Source: Stylophora pistillata
Taxonomy: Eukaryota
Direction of reading: 5' to 3'
DNA: 63,709 bases
NCBI RefSeq assembly: GCF_002571385.2
Contig: NW_019218072.1
Location: 324,290-387,998, forward strand
Every line of letters begins with the position of its first letter. Position 1 is the stretch's first letter. Made by a program: the position numbers and the translations under genes. The notes under the pieces are model-generated. The model worked only from the letters and a program-made list of their open reading frames with translations, was not told the origin of the DNA and ran no database searches. Of this stretch, positions 19,828 through 58,203 are shown piece after piece.

Positions 19828-21580
19828 TTACATCAGTTTACGACCATGCATTTCTAGTTCCAGTTCCCTTAAGGTTCTATCTATCTCCGCGTCGTATTGT
19901 TTGATCCGATCTGCGTCCTGTTCGTCATTCAGGCTGGCTCCAAGGTCTCTGATGAAAGGGTCCTAAGACAGATTTAACATTATTTTTATTACTTTTTGTA
20001 CAACAGTGGTTCGAGCTTTGGAAATGAACTCTCCATAGAGTCTTGATACCAAAGGAAACGCTTCTTTGAAACTCGCTTCTTGAGTGCTCTTCCGAAGTGC
20101 TTCATATCTTCCTACGCATGAAACAATTGTTTTATAATTTCTTCCATGAGAACATTTTCAAATGACTGTCATAAAAACAAAACGAAAGAAATCACAACAG
20201 CCAATCATAATAATTGAAGGTTCGCGTCATCATTAGCCAAGGGGACTCAAAGAAAAAACAGGCAAACCACCAAAAGCGCGGGAAAACGCGGGCGACCAAT
20301 CACGATTGTTTTCCTTTGGCGTCTGACCAATCACAGACCGAAGTAAGGCAAAACCAGAACATCCTGGATTTCTTTCGACACTTTGAAAATGACTCTGCTA
20401 TCTAAAACCATTAGCTGTGTAAAGAACGACCGCAAACTGCACTAGTCCATCTTACCGCTGCGACCAGAAAGTGTGAAAAGAAGCCTTAATGTCAAACAAG
20501 GAAGCAATAACGTACCATGTCTTTGCTTTTGGCCTCATCATCTTTCTGTGTCTGCTTTCTTCGACAACCCATAAACCCAGGGGATACTCGGCATTTCCGC
20601 TTCTGCGGCTCTCGTTTTTCGAAAGTGTCCCCATTCTGGAGTAAATTTTCTTTTTTCCTCGCCTCCTAAATCGATGCGCAAATATTTTTTGAGAGTATTG
20701 TCGAAACACCAAAGGGCTTGTTCAGGATCGTTTGAAAAATCCAAAAATAAATTAAACAGGAACAAGTTTAAGCACATTGCAAATTCCCTCGCGCTGCAAC
20801 TTTCATGCTCCTCTGTCAAAAGGCAGATATGATATGCAACAATTACAAGCTTAAGGGTACACAGACGAGGTATTGATCACACGAGTGAAACACAAAACAG
20901 ATAGACCGTTTGCATTTGACTCTCATCACCAGTAATTATAAAAACAATACAAAGTGCTGAACCTTTACAGCAAGTACTTGCGCTTCAAAGAAAGATCAGT
21001 TATACTTGGGGAAGAGCAAGAGCACAATGGCACATATTAGCGGTAAATATTTCTCTTACCCAGTTGAGTATGTCTCGAATAAGAGTCCTCTTTAATTCTC
21101 CGTCTGTGAGACTTTGTTGGAGTTGAATCTTTGACGCTGTGTCTTCATTGTTATACGTTCTGTCTCTTGAAGGGATACTTCCTGTTTGTTCATTTCTCCT
21201 CCAAGGATAGCGATCAAAGTAGTCCTGAAAGACTCCCTCTTCCCCCGGAAACACCTTTAACAAAAGTTCAAGGCTACTCAGTTCAAGTAAAACTTTTCAT
21301 ACGTCACCAAATAGATTGTCTATGCGAGCTCATCACCACACAGTGGTCAAATGTTGGGCATGCGCGAGGAAATCAATTCTGGCTGGCCGCGCCCCAATGA
21401 AAAATGGATTGAAATGAATAACGAAAGATACGAAGCAAATAAACTGTTAATGTCATGGTTTACCTTATTGTAAAGATTGTCCTTTTCTTCTCTTTGAATG
21501 GACGAGAAAGGAAGGGAAGCGCATAGAATTATGCAGAGATTTACCAGGAGTAGCAACGAGACGCTTCTCATGTATGGCAT
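19828..21580 (-). CDS. Secreted prepropeptide A (about 198 aa); join complement(21580..21464,21254..21060,20665..20516,19962..19828)
   Basis: Signal peptide MRSVSLLLLVNLCIILCAS. All introns are GT-AG, phase 0. Exon 3 encodes EKREPQKRK-CRVSPGFMGC-RRK. The last exon ends ...RELELEMHGRKLM*. Confidence 0.78.
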
Positions 21581-28435: not shown

Positions 28436-31400
28436 CAATCAGTGATTTAGTAATTAGCACGAGAAAAAAAAAGTATGCAGACGCCAGAAAGTAGTCCTTG
28501 AGATAACAAGTTGTATTTGAACAATAATTTCATCAACATTACAAACAACGCATTTCCTCTGCGCGTTTTCGAATTTATGTGGCCACGAAATTTTTTTCCG
28601 AGCAACACAAGAATTGTAACTTTCCGCAGATTTTATCTTCTTGTTAACAACAGCTTATGTTATTGTTATGCATGGCTTTGCTTTGTGTCATGAACCTTAC
28701 GCGAACGCCCTGAGAAATTTCGACAGAAAAGAATGACTTTGCACGGTTCTCTGAGAGAGAGAGCTGATCAGCCACATGTATACAAGTATACTGATTACAA
28801 CGTTAACGTTCGAGCTAGTTTGAATTCGATTTGTAACTCGTCTTAATAACATGGTTTATCCTCTTAGGCTGGCCCTATCTCCCTTTTTTCTCTGTTACAT
28901 TCTTTCCCCGTCAGCCCCCATGGCTTGACCTAAGGCATAAGGACGTTAATAGCAGAGAGCCTTGCGATGTATACGTTAAAATATTCAATTATTTACTATA
29001 AAAATTAATGACGATGACTCACCGTTTAAGAAATTCCTTTACAACCGTTTTCCGTGAGTTATCCCAATGACAGCATTGGTGCAGATACACTGGAGATGTT
29101 CAGATAGACGCATTTAAATGCTTCTCCCGTGTTTTCACAGCTATCAATTTCCGGTATTCTATTGAAGAGTGATGTCATTCCATGATAGCTAAACAGATAA
29201 AATTGTTGTGATTCCAGCCGCTTCCTATTCACGTAATTAAAGATTTACTGGTCAATAACTCGGATGTTCCACTGGGTTCGACAATCTTACCGACGAGATT
29301 TGTGAACAGAAAATAATTGTATTATCCTCCAACGGCATTTCACTTTAAGAAGTTTCTCGTTACCTAACCCTACGTGCACATGTGCACAAGTTCCTCAACT
29401 ATTTTTCCACAATGATTGTTTTGCAGTACTTTTTTCTTATTGAGACTTTACTTCTGAAATCTATGGAACTGCTTTGAAGATCGACTTCCTCAAAATATAG
29501 TGGAATTGCTTCTCGGCAGTGCCATTTAACCTCGAAGAAGAGGCAGGGGTCTATTTTTAGATCCTTCAGTCCAAATTAGCCTGTTTTTTTCTTTTTGTTT
29601 CTTAAGTGCGTCTACAAGTGGGTGTGCCTTGTTCGCATTACTTACATAACATCACAGGAGTGGCATCCTAAGCGAAGAGAACAACAACAAATGAAACATT
29701 TTGTTTAGAAGGTATTACAGAAATTACTTTCTAATTAGTATTAGTGTTACGAGAAACAAAAGATGCGTACATAGATATACGTATATATACATCGCAATGT
29801 CGTCTACTGCAATAGAAACGAAGTTTTTTCTAAGTTTACTTCGTAATGTAAGCAATTAAGATGAAAGATCGCGGAGGAAGGTATGTCCCTTGCAATTGGG
29901 TCCAGTTGCTAGACGTTTAAGTGTTTCTCTAAGATGAAGTTATGTTTAGCATTAAACTCATCTGTCATCTGTTAGGGCGTGCAACCAAAATGGAAATTAG
30001 GAATGTTGTTCTTTTTTAAAAAAGGTTTCATTGAGTTGCCCTTATTTTGATGAAGTGAACCACGGAATTTATCCTGCTCGGGGCAGGCTTTAGGTAACAT
30101 GCGAATCTTCCTTGCGTGCCTCATGAATTAACGTTTAAGTGGATATAGAGAAAAGGTCAAGTATCGCATACCACACGTTTATTGTTGAACCACAAAGTTA
30201 CATAAAGGTTAATCACGAGACCATCAGGAAACACAAAACTAGTTTAGAGATGGCGGTTATTCATTGATTTTTTGACTAACTGGCATCAACTGGCACTAAT
30301 AATGATGATTACGATTGTATTTTGTTTCTATTTCCCTTAATTAAAATTTGTCTTTATCTGAGGGATTCTAAATATTCCTCGCTTTTTCCCAATAGATTTA
30401 ACCTAGCAGCTATTCACATAACAATAATCTCTAAAAATTCAACTATTCAACAAGCCAAACTGTTTTAATCTTCTTTTTCACCTAATATTGTTGAAGATAC
30501 CAAGTGCTTGAAAGGAAAGCGATAACTAAGCTTATAAAAATAGCTCAACCACTAAGGTAAACAATGTGTTTTTTTTTCGTTTACCAATGAATTACATGAT
30601 TTAAAACATATTGCAGACTCTGTCATATGATACTGTATGCTGATCATGGAATGATTTCCGACCCTGACACGCGACCAAAATGTTCCAGTTATTTTTCTGA
30701 TTCATTATCCATATAAAAGTATTTAGCACCCATTTCCTGTGCGAAGCATCTTAGCTATCTATCTTATTATCCCGGTACCGGTAAATCAAGTGCTCAGCTC
30801 ATTCAGATAATCCCCTTTCAACAAGAGCCAGCTATTGAAAACATTACTTGAATGACTACGTTGCAGAAAGAGGTTGTTTCTACGTATTTTACCTGAGCAT
30901 GGAGACCGCTCAATAATTATAAAACCCACGTCATTATACATTTTCTCAATGTTGTATTTTCTCATGTTTTTGAGTGTTTTCTTCTACCTGCGATGTATGT
31001 TATCTAGTACCTGGATGACCTTTACAAGTTCAACACGATTCTACGATGCATGTTCGGTAGAAGGCCCCATTAATACATGCTTTTACACAAATATTTCCTA
31101 AACGAGGTTGGGCGTCACCCACTGATGGCTGGAATGGAACGCCGATAAAAGAATTGCAAAACTGTGCTTGAGAACCAAGGAACGCACGCAAACAACAGAA
31201 TTTAACCTAAATGAGTTTATAGGGCTATCACAAAAATATTTCCCAAGGTAATTACAAACAGAAAGCCTTTCAGAGATATCGCCGCACTTCGCCAATTCTT
31301 TAATTAATAGTGTGGAATTAAGTATAGCGACGCGCCATAACAATAAAACGCGCCAGTACAATGATCAGTTATCTTTCAAAATGGGTAAAAATAGAACTTG

Positions 31401-31591
31401 TCGCATACTTGACATCAATCATGACTTTGGGACATGAAAATGTGCTCTTAAAGGTCCAATATAGAATGAATATGATTTTAAAATTTTCCTGTTTTAACAC
31501 ACTTAAAGACCCTTTTTGGGGCCTTTTTTATGATAATATTCGATCACAAGTTTTTTGATAGGATTTCAATTGACCGAAAGCTTTTAAAAAT

Positions 31592-31725
31592 CTGATGATG
31601 ACTTCCGCATAGGTTGTAGAAACGTCAGTCACCACCACTTACAACAGTCCTTCTCAGGACTACACTCACTCGGACGATCGCGCCACACTTTCACATGTTA
31701 CCCTGGATTCAAGCCATTTACTGTA
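31592..31725 (+). mobile_element. Penelope-type terminal-repeat fragment (hammerhead-like)
   Basis: ctgatgatgacttccgcataggttgtagaaacgtcagtcacc...ggactacactcac. Confidence 0.5.
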
Positions 31726-32256
31726 TGAAGCGTAAGCTTGTCTTTAGCACAAATGCCTTGAAAACAAAGTTTGTTGGAATATATTGTTGATGAGCTTTGT
31801 TGTTGGTCGTTCATCAGTGCCTTGCGAAGTTCATTGCAAGGGTTGCACGTTTGTTTTGGAACGGCAAATCTTCATGGTAGCTCACTATGCAACTTCTTTT
31901 CACTGAAAGTAAACATTGGTAGCCATAGTTTAATTGTTAATCCTACGTACGTACACTGAAAAAAATATGTTTCCAGCATGGAATGAGGCGATAAGCCAAG
32001 AATGAAGAGAATTAATACCCTCTTAGATAGGCGACGATCTCATGCGTCCATTCTTGAAATCCATTTATCCGTCGTTCAAAGTTAGAAAACGCGGTCGTTT
32101 TGAAGACAGGTATTTTAAATGTTTGTCAAGGTGGCGCCAAGACAGCAATATATCTCTAGATAGTTCCGTTATCGTTTTAAGTAAATAGGAGATTGTGTTA
32201 AACAGATTATCTTCCTTCCAATTGAGTTAGAAATTAAGTTACGACTGAGGTCCGTT

Positions 32257-32809
32257 CTATGCCAAAACTCGCTTGCCAGCTATTCCATGCATCATCAACA
32301 TTTGGACGACTTCACTAATCTTTAATGGGCGCTTAAGTGACTGGTTTTTTTCTTCTCCATCTGATTTCTCTTTTGCGTAGTTGGGGTGTAAAAGAACATC
32401 CTGTGGTAACAAAGTAGAACCGAAAAATTTTACCCCCAAGTAATCAGAGTTGAGACGGTTGGGTAGCATCTAACGGACTGCCAGACTAAGTAATGGTTAA
32501 ACTAGTTTGTCATTGTCATAATTTTCCTTCTGATTGTAGTGTGTCAAAAAGTTATGGTCAGAGTTTTCCCATTTATTGCTTGTTTTTCACTCTCCAAACA
32601 AAGAGCAAAGAGGAAAGGGATACTGTTAACGAAAGAATAAAAACAAAAATCACCAAGCATTTTTAAGTTTCTGGAAACATTTTGTTACCTTCTGAGTATG
32701 GCTAATTAACAATTACTCCACGAGCGCGCGATGGATATGAGATAATAGATAGCCAATGAGGCGCGTAGCGCCGAGTTGGCTATAATCATCTCATATCCAA
32801 CAAGCACGA

Positions 32810-32844
<35 letters not shown>

Positions 32845-32962
32845 AATTATTATTTTGTGAGAAGAAACCGGATTTTTTAGCTCCCTTTTGATTTTAAGCT
32901 GACGCGTACGCGTACCATATTTGTAGATTATGCTATATTGGCTCATATACCATAATGGCTAG

Positions 32963-33012
<50 letters not shown>

Positions 33013-34378
33013 TATCTATTCGACCCATCGATAGACCCAAATTAACCCGCCACGCCGTCCAAAAAGGGGTTAAAAAATATGCATTTCAATTCTCGTTTTT
33101 TTAGCTTTAAATATTTCATTTAAAGTCATCCAATCGAATTTACCACAGATGAATGAGTAAATTTGTAGTGAAACATTTATTATTTCTCTATTTTTCCATG
33201 CTCTTGTAAACTGTACAACAAATTTAATTTGCATTATTTACTAAGCGAAAAACTATACAGTTAAATACACTTTGATCACATCAAAGCTTCCTTTATTACT
33301 TCCCTCTGCCAGCAGTTCGCGAGTGAAAAGTACACAGCACATTTTTGGCCACTAAATTTCAGTGCTCAAGTTTATGATTAGAAAATAATTCAACAGTATC
33401 CTTTCCTCTCATTCAGAGGATAAATTATTTTTATGGTCACTTGTTAACAACTACATCTATACATGTTTAAATATCATGCAAATGTCTATGAAATTTGAGA
33501 CAAAATCAGTGACGAACTCTTTTGGGTGGTGCTTTGGTCGGCCGACGGCAACCAAAGTGACCAGGCGAACAGCGCCTTCGCGCTCTCTTCCTTCCTTTCT
33601 TTTCCTGCTGATGATCAGTGTCATTCAAAGCGCTGAAAGTGTGAGCACCTTGTTTTCCACCAGACCTGGGTGCATCTGTAGGCCTAGTTAAGATAGGGCT
33701 CGAAGATTTTGGTCCCTGGCTAATTTCACCAGAGTCATCTTCTTCCACGCCAAACGAGCTTGTTAAGCCCCATCCTTCTCCAAAATGATCTTCTTCACTC
33801 GTTGTCGTACTTGTGGGAAGGACCTCCGTTTTTTCCTGATATTGGAAAAGGATTTTTTCTGTCAAAGGTGATGTCTTTTTGATAAACAGTTTAAACTTGC
33901 TTTCAAGTCATATGAAGTTTCTAGTTATATGTTGCCCTACTTGTCGGAGGGACCTCCGTTTTTTCCTGATAGACGAAAGGGATTTTTTTCGTCAAAGATA
34001 ATGTCTTTTGGATAAACGAGTTAAACTTGCTTTCTAGTGATATGAAGATATAGAACTGGACGCGTCACATGCATCACTTAAGGTTGCGAATAACAACAAT
34101 ATTAACGACAGAATGCTGAGCTAAAACTCCACTTGAGTGGATGATGAGAGAGAAATTAAAGATTGTTTTCATTGTTACGTATTTTTCTTTGCACTGAGAA
34201 GCCCATTAAAACTTGCATACTATCTTGCTCTATCGGCTCCTTAGAACGCCTGGGAAAGTTTGCTCACCCTTTTCACTTTGCTCGGCAGTCCAGCCATTTG
34301 GAGGCTAGGCATTGCATCCACGAACATCGCCAGAGTCATCAACAATCCACAAAAGGCAATATAGGTTAGGAGTTTCAT
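32257..34378 (-). CDS. Secreted prepropeptide B (about 190 aa); join complement(34378..34268,33835..33518,32400..32257)
   Basis: Signal peptide MKLLTYIAFCGLLMTLAMFVDA, phase-0 introns and an acidic pro-region. Encodes RKRARRR-CSPGHFGC-RRPTKAPPKR. Last exon ...LKRPLKISEVVQMLMMHGIA-GKR-VLA*. The exon-2 donor AGA|GTTCGT is weak, and read-through stops at 33506. Confidence 0.8.
32707..33013. mobile_element. Hairpin + TIR non-autonomous element in an intron of gene B
   Basis: Palindrome aacaattactccac...gcgcgtagcgc...gtggaataattgtt followed by ttattaaaaac...gtttttaataa. Confidence 0.7.
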
Positions 34379-34701
34379 CTCGTAATTATGGTTTGTTCAC
34401 CGTAATCAAGGTTGCACCAAAAGCTGTAGTATCGGGAAAAAGAAGACTCTATTCAGAATTAACATTGCACTAACGTAGGATTTACCCTTAATGCAACTAT
34501 TGACCTGGAAGAAGTCAAAACTGGTTCAAATAATTCAACTGCATCTGCCAATTGACTGTCACTATACCAGAGAAACTGTTCTCTTTTCTTTTTGTAATCA
34601 TGAACAAGAGGAATCGCTTTGATTTAATTTGATTTTGTCTGTTTTTTTTTTTCCGTTGGTTTGTTTGTTTTATTTTGTTTTTTTCTACGGACATTTCGTC
34701 A

Positions 34702-35018
34702 AGGAGGGGCATTGGGGCCTCTGGGAGACCGCAAAACCGGAGAAAAAAACCTCCAAAACCCGAAAACCGACGAAAAAAGGGCAGCAAAACTGAAAATCGC
34801 ATGCAAACCCGACAAAACCGCTACATTTTCACCTTTCAAGGGGTCAAAAAGGAAAAACCGAAAACCGCATCAGAGTTTTCGTGAAAACCGAAGGCAAAAA
34901 CACGTAAAATCCGCTAAGCGCTCTGAACATCAAAACCGAAAACCCGAACCTATTTTGCCGAAAAAACCGATCCAAAAAACAATCAAAACCGCAAAACCGA
35001 CAATCCCAAAGCCCCCCT
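34702..35018. mobile_element. MITE with many AAAACCG subterminal repeats, in intron 1 of gene B
   Basis: aggggcattggg / cccaaagcccccct termini and about 10 aaaacc(c)g motifs. Explains the spurious K/P-rich ORFs. Confidence 0.7.
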
Positions 35019-35187
35019 CGTTGAGGGTAACTTTTATGACTGAAAACACATTATTATTTATTATTTATTATTTATTATTATTCTTCGGCAACTTCCAACT
35101 TGGAGGAGTTGGTGAGAAATGAATGAGAAGGCCGACCGCAAACGAACCACAAAGCAGAAATTCAGTGTTTCCGCTTTAGGCGGGTCG

Positions 35188-35232
<45 letters not shown>

Positions 35233-36457
35233 TAAAAAACAAAACCAGAAAAACGATATAATAAATGAATAAAAAAGAATTTAAAAGGGGCATGTTTTCC
35301 CTTGTTACGAAAGATACAGTCACTAAGCAAAGCAAGGCTATACGTCACCAGCGGACCTTTATACAACGCCATAATATCTAACATTTGAGAATGCGAGATA
35401 AATGAAGAACAGAATTACGCAGGAAGACTATACTAAAAAAAGAGATCGGCAACGATTTCCTGAATCGTGATTTCCGTTAAAATGACGATTGCTCCTTACT
35501 TTCCAGCTCCAACGGGAAGAAAGGTTATATTTAAGGTTGACTGGAACTATTTCCTTTATGAATAAATCACACTATGTCCTTTTACCTACATACCACGGCC
35601 AATGCATAAGCAGAAGTAACTTGATCTATCTTGTTTCACTCTCTTGTATCGTGCGACATAACTCTACTTTTTTTCTCAGATTTTCCTTTTGACTAGAGAA
35701 CTTGTAAGTTCTAGCTAGTGGAAATTTTGTGTGGGTGGTAAATTTAAGATTCAGTAGGAACGGAAATACGCCAAGTTCCAGGATAGAAGCGTTTTTGTTT
35801 TTTTCCTACATACGTTGTACGAGACTGAATTTAAAAAATAAAAATGCAATAAAATGAAGAAAAAGTCGCAGAATTAGTGCGAAGGAATGCATAAGCTTTC
35901 GAAAAAAATAATTATTAACGTAAACCTCGGTTTCCGATACGAAAAGGTTTCTGGGACTCCTTTTCTCAAATGCAGTTGTTACGTAGCTTCACGTGTTTGT
36001 AAAAGCGGTCCACTCTTTCTTTGTGGGGGAAAATTAAAGCTTGACAGGAAAAGTAACAATCATAATCGTTTGCTTCAGCAAAGCCGTCAAGCTCTGATCC
36101 TAACAGAGTCACATCCTCTTAGAAGAATGAAAACCTGATCTACGAATCTCAAACCATACTACTAATTGTTAGATCCCAGAAAGGCTGAAATCATTTTTGG
36201 TTACCTCAGCGAGGTGGCTGCCGAGCTCTGAGACGAGCGAGCTACAATACGTAACAAGAAATCATTCCACTTAATATGAATAGGTAAATCTAACTCACTT
36301 CTTTCGATACCCTGATACCATTGAAAGCGTGCTTAAATCTTTCGAAATAAAGGAGAAATCTTAAATGTGCTGCACTGTTGCACAATTTACTAGAATTGGG
36401 CTGATGAATTCCATGGTGATGAACACATTTACTTAGAAAAAAAAAGTGGAAACCTAC

Positions 36458-36654
36458 CACTTAGGGTTGTAGCTTGCTTCACTTGAGAGATCCTATCGAT
36501 GTTCTCTGATAGCTGGTTGCTCGTCTCTTGCCTTCTTCTCTGTTATCGCTGGTCAACGCACTAACCGTATACACGCCTTCGACCCGTTTTTATAGCCAGC
36601 ACTCGCGCTACGTCTCGGAAGCACGCATTGTGAAATCAGTTATTGTGACGTAAT
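36458..36654 (-). promoter_or_regulatory. Promoter and non-coding first exon of prepropeptide B
   Basis: TATAAAAA at 36594-36587, TTAGT Inr at about 36562, CRE-like TGACGTAA at 36647-36654, donor GTG|GTAGGT at 36458 and matching acceptor at 34423. Confidence 0.65.
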
Positions 36655-38179
36655 CCTCGAAGTGACACTGATCAGGATATCTTGAAATGTTGTTTTAACG
36701 TTGTCCAGTGATATCTTCTGAAAAGCTTTAGTTGTAATGTACTTGACATTGCCTTCACTGTAAATTGTTGAGTCTATAGAGCTACAAGTTAACATACCGA
36801 TGGTGATTTGCGATAACTTCATGATGACTGATGGGTGTCTTCTAATTTATTTACACTTAGTATGGGATTTCCTGTCGACCACGATTAGAAGGGGTATTTT
36901 TGCAAATCTTGTGTACGTTGGGCACGAGGAACACATTCTTGTTTATTTATCTTTGGTTAAATTTAGCTCTCTCTCTCCTCTTCTCCAAATATGGAAAACT
37001 ATTTGTGTTGAAGACAAGGCGTCTGAAGATCACCGTCAATTTGTCGTATTTTGCTTGTACCCGTAAAAGCCAATTAGTTTGAGGAAGTTTTGATCTGTTC
37101 CATGATTGATGATCTCGTGGTGGTACACCGGACTTTCTTCGCTGATCATTGCTCTCAAAGATTATCAGTTAATTTTTGAGATTTTTTCCCTGGTCTCATT
37201 CAGTTTCCATTTCCTAAAATGTCATCTATGTGACCGCAAAATGTGGATATAATTTCATAAATTTTCCAAAAAAATCTGCCCCTTTAATTAGCTACAAGTA
37301 TCATGATCAAAATCCAGATTTATTGAAAAAAGCTTTGTTTTCTAAGTCGAAACCAATCCCTTAAATATGCAGAACGCTTCAAACATTCGTCTAGGTCTAA
37401 CTGATACTTATTTCTTAGTTTTTGCCGTTGCTCTCATTTTCTAGGATCACCGTAAACATCTGCCCACACACCATAAACAGTCTTTGAAACTTAACTATGT
37501 GTGTAATCGGGTCTGGTGTTAAAACATGAACTAGGAGATATGGTACAGGGTTGATTCTCGAACGTGATATCCGCTTCATTGCATCCTCACGAAGGTAGTG
37601 AGTTGAGTTATCTCGGAAATAGTTGGACGATAATTATTTCTTAGTACGTGACAATTTTGAAAAATTAAGAAAATGAAGACAAATTAACTTTAGCTGCCCT
37701 GAGAACGTCCTACGTGCTCACGAAGTGTTCGTGTATGATAACTATTTGATGCTTAAATACCAGCAGAAGGTCCTACTCTGTGAAAAAAAAAAAAAAGCTG
37801 TTAACATGTGTCGCCAAAATTCAGGCTAAACACGGTGTGCCTCGACTTCACTTTCTGTTGGCATGAGTTGATCAGATTCTGGCCAAAATAGACTTCTTCT
37901 TTTAAAGATTTTTCCTTTTTTTTTTTTCTTAATTAAAAAGCCATTTACATGTAAATTACAAAGAGGAATCATGAGGTCGTGTTATCATAAGCTCGTGTTA
38001 TAGTAGTGAAACGATGTGTAATTGAGGTTCTCTTTTTTTCCTTTTGTCTATTTTTCGTTTGGTTGTATGCGTGTTTGCCTGGGATTTTTTTTTTGGCTTG
38101 GAGAGGATCGGATTCTTGAGAATTTCTGTTGGATAATCCTTTTTTCATTTAAGCTGTTCCGTTCCCGTTTCTACAAAAT

Positions 38180-57209: not shown

Positions 57210-58203
57210 ATGATCATGGCACGGCGAGAATTAGCAGTTTTTTTATTGTCCCTGGTAACACTTGCTGTCTGTGCGTTACCCGAACACTCACGCATTCCAA
57301 GGAAGAAAGGGATTGACCCACAGGTATCGTAATTACAACCTTGAAACCGTTGTTCCTCGATGCATAGAGAGGTTCTGGCGAATTGTGAATTCTGTTTGTT
57401 TTGTTAGCACGATCGCCCTTCCCCTTTATTTCATAGCTGTTTGTAATCAGTGAAAACCATAATACACGTCATTTTAACAGTAGTATACCTCATTATTTTT
57501 GTTAGCGATTGATACAGTAAACCATTTAAAATTCAAATCTATATGGATCATAAATAATTTGATTGCGCACACAAAAAAAATAGTTTTGTTAAAATGGACG
57601 TTTACTAACGTGAAAGGCGTATATGAGGTGGACACTTATATCACACATACAGCAAAGGTGTGAGAAATTTTTGTGCTTTCTTTTATGTTTATTTACGAAT
57701 GTTCAACCTTTATGGTTAATTACAGAGCTACATACAGTCGGGTCTCGGAAATTGGATAATTTTGTCAAGGTTCAAGTGCTCAGTAAACATCAGGCACAAA
57801 AAATTACCAAGGACTCAAGCTCTTACCTTTTTTTCTTGCCTTTTTTTCTTTTTGTTTATTCCGTTTCATTTTGTTTTAATTATTTAATGATTGGTTTTCA
57901 AGCGTGCTCATCTTGTTTGTTACGTTTGCAATTCTTTGCCATTTCATTGATTGATTCGTCGAATTATCTACATATTACGCATAGAATGCCAGGAGGGAGA
58001 CTATATCGGCCAAAAAGTTTCAAGATGCAATTCCAAGTACGTTACATGTCTCTAAACTCGAAACGAGCCCGGCAAAAGCATCTTCTACAGATAAAGGACG
58101 ATTTCTGGGTGGAAACAAACGATCAGCACGGCGATGTCTTTCTGGGCACGTATATTTGTGTTTTCCGAAAAAAACGTCGGGCAGACGGCGAGAGTTTGCT
58201 TGA
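57210..58203 (+). CDS. Secreted prepropeptide C (110 aa); join(57210..57323,57985..58203)
   Basis: Signal peptide MARRELAVFLLSLVTLAVCA and a phase-0 GT-AG intron. Encodes KRSARR-CLSGHVYLCFPKKTS-GRRR, which includes an amidation signal. Confidence 0.75.

What the first reader, a model, noticed from the sequence alone, without database searches (positions are those of the whole stretch)
32257..36654. Precursor B: complete gene from TATA/CRE promoter to a GKR-amidated tail, homologous to A at both peptide sites
Seen: TATA and Inr about 32 nt apart, a CRE-like site, a non-coding exon, a signal exon ending VKR|, an acidic spacer, a furin-type RKRARRR, then CSPGHFGC-RR. The last exon, KR-PLKISEVVQMLMMHGIA-GKR, parallels A's EIDRTLRELELEMHG-RK (helix ending MHG). 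Established: CRE plus TATA promoters are common in activity-regulated neuropeptide genes. Inference: the products are an 8-residue ring and a 17-residue amidated peptide. Retention at the weak GTTCGT donor would instead give a cationic CSPGHFGCRRPTKAPPKRVRH, which is antimicrobial-like.
Basis: partly seen in the sequence, partly recalled or inferred. Interest (0 to 1): 0.82.

Follow-up and report, generated by a model that had tools for sequence, protein, structure and literature searches.

The report
Coral secreted cationic loop-peptide precursor

Summary
The gene is real. RNA contigs from four coral runs show both introns: 36457-34424 and 34267-33836.

The proposed fourth exon (32400-32257) is not supported:
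- In all four runs the exon 3 contigs run unspliced through the alleged GTTCGT donor, the in-frame TGA (33508-33506) and about 300 nt of 3'UTR.
- No 33518->32400 joint was seen, and depth on the claimed exon is at intron background.
- The donor GT is missing in two related corals, and the exon is not conserved in a syntenic locus.

The product is the 146-aa protein XP_022797721.1 (LOC111335973, Stylophora pistillata, uncharacterised).

A profile search of 1.84 billion proteins and of the whole genome finds a tiny family, seen so far only in Stylophora, Pocillopora and two unnamed coral samples. It has two paralogues, this gene and "Precursor C" in the same window. Homology to "Precursor A" is unproven at the ring and absent at the second site.

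My reading is a convertase-processed secreted peptide, defence-like or signalling. Its function is untested.

The parts
36646..36653 (-). CRE-like octamer TTACGTCA, about 52 nt upstream of the TATA box
   Evidence: Conserved in L006 but changed to TTACGTTA in L001. Its count in the window equals the chance expectation (4 against 3.9).
36586..36594 (-). TATA box (TATAAAAAC) within a conserved proximal promoter block (about 36429-36888)
   Evidence: Invariant in three species. The block is 78% identical to syntenic L006 over 463 nt and lies within the 86%-identical L001 match 37148-36458, better conserved than the coding exon 3.
36458..36562 (-). Exon 1, non-coding. The 3' end is fixed at 36458. 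The 5' end near 36562 is inferred from the TATA spacing only.
   Evidence: Joint 34423/36458 in all 4 RNA runs. There is no ATG in the exon. Upstream transcription in run X1 and in L001 leaves the true start open.
34424..36457 (-). Intron 1 (2034 nt, GT..AG), holding a high-copy repeat (about 34624-35115) and a (TAA)n microsatellite
   Evidence: joints table and depth table.
34268..34423 (-). Exon 2: 45 nt of 5'UTR, then ATG at 34378 and 37 codons (phase 0). The predicted signal peptide is residues 1-22 (34378-34313), with VDA before the predicted cut.
   Evidence: Conserved in L001 and L006, tblastn E = 4e-8 on L004 and 1.3e-7 on L006.
33836..34267 (-). Intron 2 (432 nt, GT..AG), containing a 130-nt tandem duplicate (33931-34047) of the intron/exon 3 boundary with an in-frame stop
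   Evidence: Joint in all 4 runs. Duplication.
33170..33835 (-). Exon 3, the last exon: CDS 33835-33509, stop 33508-33506, then a 3'UTR of about 300-340 nt with AATAAA at 33181-33176. The exact poly(A) site is not determined.
   Evidence: Contigs of 4 runs are contiguous from 33834 down to 33244, 33229, 33188 and 32984. The 3'UTR is conserved in L001 to about 33190 and in L006 at 33315-33178.
33572..33592 (-). Polybasic convertase site RKRARRR (residues 119-125). R121 and R124 are invariant across both paralogue types, with the spacing of P4 and P1 of a furin-type R-x-x-R site.
   Evidence: Alignment A3. Cleavage itself is inferred.
33509..33571 (-). C-terminal 21-residue peptide: a Cys126-Cys133 ring followed by a Pro/Lys/Arg tail ending in His. 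Net charge is +6.
   Evidence: Ring, PTK motif and terminal His are invariant in the family.
32257..32400 (-). It is not part of the gene; it is an unconserved chance ORF in downstream DNA.
   Evidence: No joint and background depth, with one unspliced contig across its acceptor in X1. No nucleotide or protein match in syntenic L006. No Pfam match.

Best explanation
This is the three-exon gene LOC111335973 of Stylophora pistillata. It encodes a 146-residue secreted, largely disordered precursor.

Shown:
- The exon structure, its expression, and the stop at 33508-33506.
- Conservation of this structure in two further corals.
- Restriction of the family to a few related corals, with one paralogue 24 kb away.

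Inferred:
- Signal peptidase cuts after residue 22.
- A furin-type convertase cuts at the invariant R121-x-x-R124 site.
- This releases a 21-22-residue peptide with one disulfide loop (C-S-P-G-H-x-x-C) and a Pro/Lys/Arg-rich tail of net charge +6, or +9 in the relatives.

My preferred function is an extracellular defence or effector peptide of the cationic host-defence kind. In that reading the mildly acidic pro-region masks the basic peptide until cleavage.

Odds: gene model about 0.95; processed C-terminal peptide about 0.6; defence or effector role about 0.4.
For: - Splice joints and unspliced passage through the stop in 4 RNA runs from 4 studies.
- The database protein P0006 (XP_022797721.1) is 146 aa and matches the window's translation at every aligned position.
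- The orthologues end at the same ...K-[RK]-x-x-H stop.
- R121, R124, both Cys, G-H, P-T-K and the terminal His are invariant in alignment A3.
- The C-terminal peptide carries +6 to +9 and has Lys-rich insertions of differing length between species, while the pro-region of B is net -5.
- dN/dS against species 2 is 0.71 overall and 1.6 over the 21 mature codons. This is a small sample.
- Every exon 3 variant listed in the RNA runs changes the protein.
- Only 4 relatives turned up in 1.84e9 representative proteins, and only 2 loci in the genome.
- The ESM Atlas model is disordered, with pLDDT 0.48.
- The layout parallels Hydra arminins, which have a conserved negative N-terminal part and a poorly conserved positive C-terminal part (PMC4820302).
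Against: - No peptide, cleavage or activity data exist.
- The tail has no hydrophobic face, so it is not a classical amphipathic antimicrobial peptide.
- The first half of the ring and the PTK motif are strictly conserved. That fits a specific receptor or target better than general membrane attack.
- The C-type paralogue keeps a Gly-Arg-Arg-Arg amidation-type site, which looks like a hormone.
- The C-type pro-region is basic, not acidic.
- dN/dS above 1 rests on 21 codons and was not tested for significance.
- Cell type and inducibility are unknown.
- Contigs cannot exclude rare isoforms.
Confidence: 0.4

Rival explanations
1. The gene and processing are the same, but the peptide is a signalling ligand (a neuropeptide or hormone-like ring peptide). 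It may be trimmed further at the conserved P-K-[RK] site three residues from the end, and it would act on a receptor.
For: - C-[SL]-x-G-H and P-T-K are strictly conserved across both paralogue types.
- The C-type paralogue has a Gly-RRR amidation and cleavage signal in Stylophora and in Pocillopora.
- A basic site followed by a short discarded tail is conserved at the C-terminus.
- The TATA promoter has a CRE-like site.
- Presumed cyclic peptides of medusozoan cnidarians exist (CxSPMCWFRxamide, PMC6909153).
Against: - There is one peptide copy per precursor and no amidation signal in the B type.
- The tail varies in length and sequence between close relatives, and dN/dS is high.
- The family is confined to a few related corals.
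- The CRE-like site is no more frequent than chance and is lost in one species.
- There is no sequence relation to any described cnidarian neuropeptide family.
Confidence: 0.3
2. The protein is not cleaved. It is a small, disordered secreted protein whose basic, looped C-terminus anchors it to polyanions such as mucus, matrix or the skeletal organic phase.
For: - The predicted model is disordered.
- The pro-region also holds conserved patches, such as E-G-W and D-S-G-E.
- The polybasic stretch and basic tail together form one long cationic patch.
Against: - The invariant R-x-x-R spacing sits directly before the first Cys in both paralogue types.
- The pro-regions of B and C are barely alignable while the C-terminal module is conserved. 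This is as expected if only that module is the product.
Confidence: 0.2
3. One reading: a weak GTTCGT donor at 33518|33517 is spliced to 32400, adding an exon that yields a GKR-amidated 17-residue peptide homologous to Precursor A's tail.
For: - The acceptor at 32401 looks good, and the frame stays open for 48 codons.
- Contigs drop rare isoforms, so a minor form cannot be excluded (notes).
Against: - No joint in 4 runs, and four contigs cross the donor unspliced.
- Depth on the exon is at or below intron background.
- The donor GT is absent in both relatives.
- The exon is not conserved in the syntenic locus.
- The NCBI model and all transcript-derived proteins end at the TGA, at 146 aa.
- Similarity to A's tail is at chance level, p = 0.37.
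Confidence: 0.03

Closest known systems
Hydra arminins (cationic antimicrobial peptide precursors)
   Same: Both have a signal peptide, a negatively charged N-terminal part and a poorly conserved, strongly positive C-terminal peptide. Both are lineage-restricted and evolve fast (PMC4820302).
   Different: There is no sequence similarity: the profile search found no other family. Arminins lack the disulfide ring. Here the ring and the PTK motif are conserved, and activity is untested.
Coral ShK-type antimicrobial peptides (damicornin, AmAMP1, digitiferin)
   Same: Secreted coral peptides made from a signal-bearing precursor (PMC12496222); from my own knowledge damicornin and AmAMP1 also carry a pro-region.
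   Different: Those peptides are cysteine-rich ShK-domain peptides with several disulfide bonds (mature digitiferin has 10 Cys). This one has two Cys and no ShK match in Pfam at E up to 1.
Cnidarian cyclic FRamide-type neuropeptide preprohormones (CxSPMCWFRxamide, CxGQMCWFRamide)
   Same: Short peptides with one presumed cystine ring, cut from a secreted precursor (PMC6909153).
   Different: Those have a C-x4-C ring, several copies per precursor and a Gly-basic amidation site. They occur in Scyphozoa and Cubozoa. Here the ring is C-x6/7-C, there is a single copy, the B type has no amidation site, and the family was found only in Stylophora, Pocillopora and two unnamed coral samples.
'Precursor C' of the same window (57210-58203, +) and its Pocillopora orthologues (RMX57008.1, CAH3155106.1)
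   Same: It is a true paralogue. It has the same three-exon plan and the same R-x-x-R, C-x-x-G-H...C and P-(T)-K module near the C-terminus (profile E = 1.9e-9 in the genome search).
   Different: Its ring is C-x7-C and its pro-region is shorter and basic. A Gly-RRR site follows the peptide, and its charge is lower (+4).

Membership tests
Amidated cnidarian neuropeptide preprohormone | N-terminal signal peptide | tested here: met
   The hydrophobic residues 1-22 with VDA before the predicted cut are conserved in three species. No dedicated predictor was available.
Amidated cnidarian neuropeptide preprohormone | Peptide followed by Gly plus basic residues (amidation signal) within the real transcript | tested here: not met
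   The only GKR lies in the claimed exon 32400-32257, which is not spliced on. The true C-terminal peptide has no Gly-basic site. The C-type paralogue does have G-RRR.
Amidated cnidarian neuropeptide preprohormone | Several copies of the peptide per precursor (usual, not obligatory) | tested here: not met
   There is a single ring module per precursor in all family members.
Amidated cnidarian neuropeptide preprohormone | Expression in neurons | not testable with these tools
   The gene id was not found in the held supplements of the Stylophora cell atlas or in any paper text.
Furin / proprotein-convertase substrate | R-x-[KR]-R or R-x-x-R motif in an exposed region of a secretory protein | tested here: met
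   R121-A-R-R124 lies within RKRARRR. R121 and R124 are invariant in 12 sequences of both paralogue types. Actual cleavage was not tested.
Cationic host-defence peptide precursor (arminin-like layout) | Anionic pro-region plus cationic C-terminal peptide | tested here: inconclusive
   In the B type the pro-region is net -5 and the peptide +6 to +9. In the C type the region before the ring (signal and basic site included) is net basic.
Cationic host-defence peptide precursor (arminin-like layout) | Antimicrobial activity of the mature peptide | not testable with these tools
   This needs a synthetic oxidised peptide and MIC assays.
ShK-type coral antimicrobial peptides | ShK domain with six Cys | tested here: not met
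   The mature part has two Cys, and there is no Pfam hit apart from a chance-level SRRM_C match.
CRE-regulated TATA promoter | TATA box about 30 nt upstream of the start, plus a conserved full CRE | tested here: inconclusive
   The TATA box is invariant in 3 species. The CRE is a variant (TTACGTCA), occurs at chance frequency and is altered in one species. The start is not mapped, and some contigs run through it.
Same family as 'Precursor A' (19828-21580) | Significant similarity to the B/C family profile | tested here: not met
   The profile of the C-terminal module scores A's ring exon at E = 41 in the window's six-frame translation. C against A gives p = 0.78. B against A pairwise gives p about 2e-4, carried by residues that B's orthologues do not keep.

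The most novel reading that the evidence does not exclude
B and C define an undescribed family of convertase-released, single-disulfide cationic peptides, so far seen only in Stylophora, Pocillopora and two unnamed corals. The C type would be amidated and hormone-like, and the B type would have gained a Lys/Pro-rich tail. This would be either a new class of coral host-defence peptide outside the ShK group, or a ligand family that was turned into a defence peptide after duplication.
Probability: 0.35. Interest if true: 0.55.

Novelty: new member of a known kind. Interest (0 to 1): 0.35.

Why it matters
The coral antimicrobial peptides named in the papers read here (damicornin, AmAMP1, digitiferin) are all ShK-type, and the cnidarian neuropeptide annotations consulted describe no such ring peptide. 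A small, expressed, fast-evolving gene pair for a looped cationic peptide in the model coral Stylophora pistillata and its relative Pocillopora is a cheap candidate to test, since the peptide is only 21-29 residues with one disulfide. It bears on how corals control microbes or signal between cells.

Tried and rejected
- Pfam scan of the three exon translations gave nothing real.
- The word-based protein search found only two clusters.
- PDB sequence searches with the peptide and with the family profile gave no relative.
- ESM Atlas gave no feature hit and only low-TM structural noise.
- Rfam on 31500-37500 gave nothing.
- Searching papers for the gene, protein and run accessions gave no paper. 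The gene id is absent from the held supplements of the Stylophora cell atlas.
- Digitiferin was considered as a relative and rejected, because it is a 10-Cys ShK-type peptide.
- A recent gene conversion between A and B at the ring was considered and rejected, because the codons differ throughout.
- The 'W' after the C-terminus in P0003 was considered as a stop-loss allele. It is more likely an artefact: a metagenome gene call on an unspliced contig that probably read TGA as Trp (the called gene does not translate to the protein).
It was rejected because no placement gives GT..AG and 33 nt is too short. It fits a deletion at an AGA microhomology.
Exons were searched by reference, and full-length comparisons used database proteins P0001, P0006 and others. 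The two coding exons were joined only inside local scripts, to translate them and to compute dN/dS.
Full report
**What is in the sequence.**
- A TATA box lies at 36594-36586 and a CRE-like TTACGTCA at 36653-36646.
- A short exon without any ATG ends at a GT donor (36458|36457).
- The next exon has its ATG at 34378 and 37 codons that start with a hydrophobic signal sequence and end VKR.
- A third exon starts at 33835 and reads through a Ser/Thr/Asp/Glu-rich stretch to RKRARRR. A CSPGHFGC ring follows, then a basic Pro-rich tail, then TGA at 33508-33506.
- The claimed last exon, 32400-32257, is open in the stated frame and does end ...MHGIAGKRVLA-stop.

**Transcript evidence.** The window comes from a coral, and 24 public runs were listed for the 4.9-kb stretch, 20 of which hold at least part of it. 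I laid the contigs of four RNA runs from four studies on 32000-36900.
- All four show the joint 34423/36458, which is intron 1 (2034 nt, GT..AG).
- All four show the joint 33834-5/34267-8, which is intron 2 (432 nt, GT..AG).
- From 33834 the exon 3 contigs run on without a break to 33244, 33229, 33188 and 32984. They cross the proposed GTTCGT donor (33517), the stop codon and about 300 nt of 3'UTR.
- No run shows a joint from 33518 to 32400.
- Depth over 32164-32491 is 0-18, at or below the intron background of the same runs. Exon 3 has 40-496.
- The one contig that covers the claimed exon (X1, 32000-32771) is colinear with the genome across its acceptor.
- Contigs can hide rare isoforms, so a trace form is not excluded. 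The main mRNA ends with the TGA at 33506.

**Identity.** The word-based search with exon 3 returned a 146-aa protein that is 98% identical (P0001) and a 59% relative (P0002). The cluster of P0001 contains XP_022797721.1 / PFX21162.1, 'uncharacterized protein LOC111335973 [Stylophora pistillata]', 146 aa. It matches the window's two coding exons at every aligned position. So the organism is Stylophora pistillata, and the public annotation already holds the three-exon model. No paper in the library mentions the gene or protein identifiers.

**Relatives and conservation.** A profile of the first hits was run against 1.84 billion representative proteins and found four proteins only.
- P0003 is an unspliced ORF artefact of the same gene.
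- P0002 comes from species 2.
- P0004 comes from species 3.
- P0005 belongs to a cluster that includes Pocillopora damicornis and P. meandrina proteins. It is the orthologue of the window's 'Precursor C'.

The same kind of profile run against the whole 398-Mb genome finds just two loci, this gene and C at window 57210-58203, each with its signal exon.

The RNA contig L001 of species 2 is spliced at the same two places and ends at the same ...K-R-x-R-H stop.

The genomic contig L006 of species 3 is colinear with the window over about 13 kb.
- It has the same acceptor and donor for exon 2, the same phase and the same position of the stop.
- It has no GT at the alleged donor.
- It has no nucleotide or protein match to 32400-32257, although short blocks on either side of it are conserved.

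**What is conserved in the protein.** Across twelve sequences of both paralogue types the invariant positions in the C-terminal module are T110, D111, G118, R121, R124, C126, G129, H130, P136, T137, K138 and the C-terminal His; M1, Q77 and S82 are also invariant.
- R121 and R124 have the P4/P1 spacing of a furin-type site directly before the ring. That is my reason to infer cleavage there. It would leave a 21-22-residue peptide in Stylophora and 27-30 residues in the relatives.
- The ring is C-x6-C in Stylophora and species 3, and C-x7-C in species 2 and in the C type.
- The tail differs in length through Lys-rich insertions but always stays strongly basic, +6 to +9.
- The B pro-region without the basic site is net -5. 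The C pro-region is basic.
- Against species 2, dS is 0.29 and dN/dS is 0.71 overall. Over the 21 mature codons dN/dS is 1.6, which is too few codons to test.
- The five exon 3 variants listed in the RNA runs all change the protein: S64L, loss of residue 70, F104Y, A122T and R143G.
- By contrast, the 690 nt up to and beyond the TATA box are 86% identical to species 2, more conserved than the coding exon 3 (75% nucleotide identity; dS 0.29).
- The Atlas model of the protein is disordered.

**Promoter.** The TATA box and a block around it are invariant in three species. The block includes GTGATTTCAC-ATGCGTGCTTCCGAG, conserved at all but one position.
- The CRE-like site is kept in two species and changed in the third. 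The octamer is no more frequent in the window than chance.
- The depth steps in X8, X5 and X1 fit a start within 36428-36591.
- However, X1 has depth 222 upstream of the TATA box against an intron background of 15. In addition, contigs of X11 and L001 link upstream sequence, exon 1 and exon 2.
- The start at 36562 is therefore plausible but not shown. A longer first exon or a second upstream start exists at least at low level.

**Relation to 'Precursor A'.**
- The ring exon of A aligns to B's C-terminus with 10 of 21 identities. The shuffle p is about 2e-4, and the window-wide tblastn E is 0.019.
- The B/C family profile scores A at E = 41, and C against A gives p = 0.78.
- The shared G-C-R-R is not kept by B's own orthologues.
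- The codons differ, so this is not a recent gene conversion.
- The second 'site' shares only L-MHG (p = 0.37) and lies in an exon that is not part of the gene.
- Homology to A is thus unproven at site 1 and unsupported at site 2. The true paralogue is C.

**How it most likely works.** The steps that are shown are these:
- transcription, splicing and the reading frame;
- a secretory-type N-terminus;
- the conserved basic site, ring and tail;
- the narrow taxonomic range and the fast protein evolution.

The inferred steps are entry into the secretory pathway, signal cleavage after residue 22, furin-type cleavage at R121-x-x-R124, one disulfide between C126 and C133, and release of the basic looped peptide.

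For its role I weigh three options.
- **Defence or effector peptide, about 0.4.** In its favour are the charge, the variable tail, the fast evolution, the lineage restriction and a layout like Hydra arminins (PMC4820302).
- **Signalling ligand, about 0.3.** In its favour are the strictly conserved half-ring and PTK motif, the Gly-RRR site kept in the C type, and a conserved basic site three residues before the end.
- **Uncleaved basic-tailed secreted protein, about 0.2.**

**Comparison with known families.**
- It is not a ShK-type coral peptide like damicornin, AmAMP1 or digitiferin. It has two Cys and no ShK match.
- It is not related in sequence to arminins or to the cyclic FRamide peptides of jellyfish.
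- It has no relative of solved structure.
- It is a new, small family of a familiar kind: a secreted propeptide with a basic C-terminal product.

**Limits.**
- All RNA evidence is from assembled contigs, so starts, ends, strand and minor isoforms are not resolved.
- The species behind P0002 and P0004 are unnamed.
- No cell-type or induction data could be reached.
Exons went in by reference, and full-length work used database proteins.
- The 42 N in the window lie outside this gene and were left as they are.

Noticed in passing
window 33801-33917 and 33931-34047: A 130-nt tandem duplication (85% identical) copies the intron 2 / exon 3 boundary. The upstream copy keeps the acceptor-like tatcag|GAAAAAACGGAGGTCC but runs into a stop. 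RNA uses only the downstream acceptor at 33835.
   Followed up: partly
window 32656-33147 and 34624-35115: Two stretches flanking exons 2-3 have RNA-contig depths of 1e3 to 1e5 with many rearranged joints, so they are high-copy transcribed repeats. The first contains a 39-nt inverted repeat (32708-32746 / 32785-32823), which looks MITE-like. The first repeat lies just downstream of the gene's 3'UTR.
   Followed up: no
window 36893-37732 (minus strand, upstream of the promoter): This non-coding DNA is 73-74% identical to the syntenic locus L006 and is included in the spliced RNA contig L001 of another species. In run X1 the part laid (36592-36900) is transcribed at depth about 220. It could be an upstream start, a longer exon 1 or an enhancer RNA.
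   Followed up: partly
window about 33485-33520; protein P0009: A variant seen on 8 contigs lacks 33 nt around the stop codon, between two AGA triplets. It replaces the last three residues (VRH) with HLHDI. No GT..AG placement is possible, so it is probably a deletion allele.
   Followed up: partly
window 57210-58203 (+), 'Precursor C': This is the only paralogue in the genome and has the same three-exon plan. Its peptide is followed by G-RRR in Stylophora and Pocillopora. The Stylophora copy ends ...EFA, whereas the Pocillopora proteins end ...EF[VL]SH, so the conserved terminal His is missing here.
   Followed up: partly
window 33520, 33583, 33636, 33738, 33756: All exon 3 differences listed between the assembly and four RNA runs change the protein (R143G, A122T, F104Y, loss of residue 70, S64L). 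No synonymous change is among those shown.
   Followed up: partly
window 30103-30855, 28994-29343, 29610-29739: Further blocks are conserved with the syntenic contig L006 (67-75% identity over 130-780 nt) downstream of the gene. They may be exons or regulatory DNA of a neighbouring gene.
   Followed up: no
window 35181-35253: A long (TAA)n microsatellite lies in intron 1, next to an (ATTATTT)-like stretch at 35048-35090. Contigs break there.
   Followed up: no
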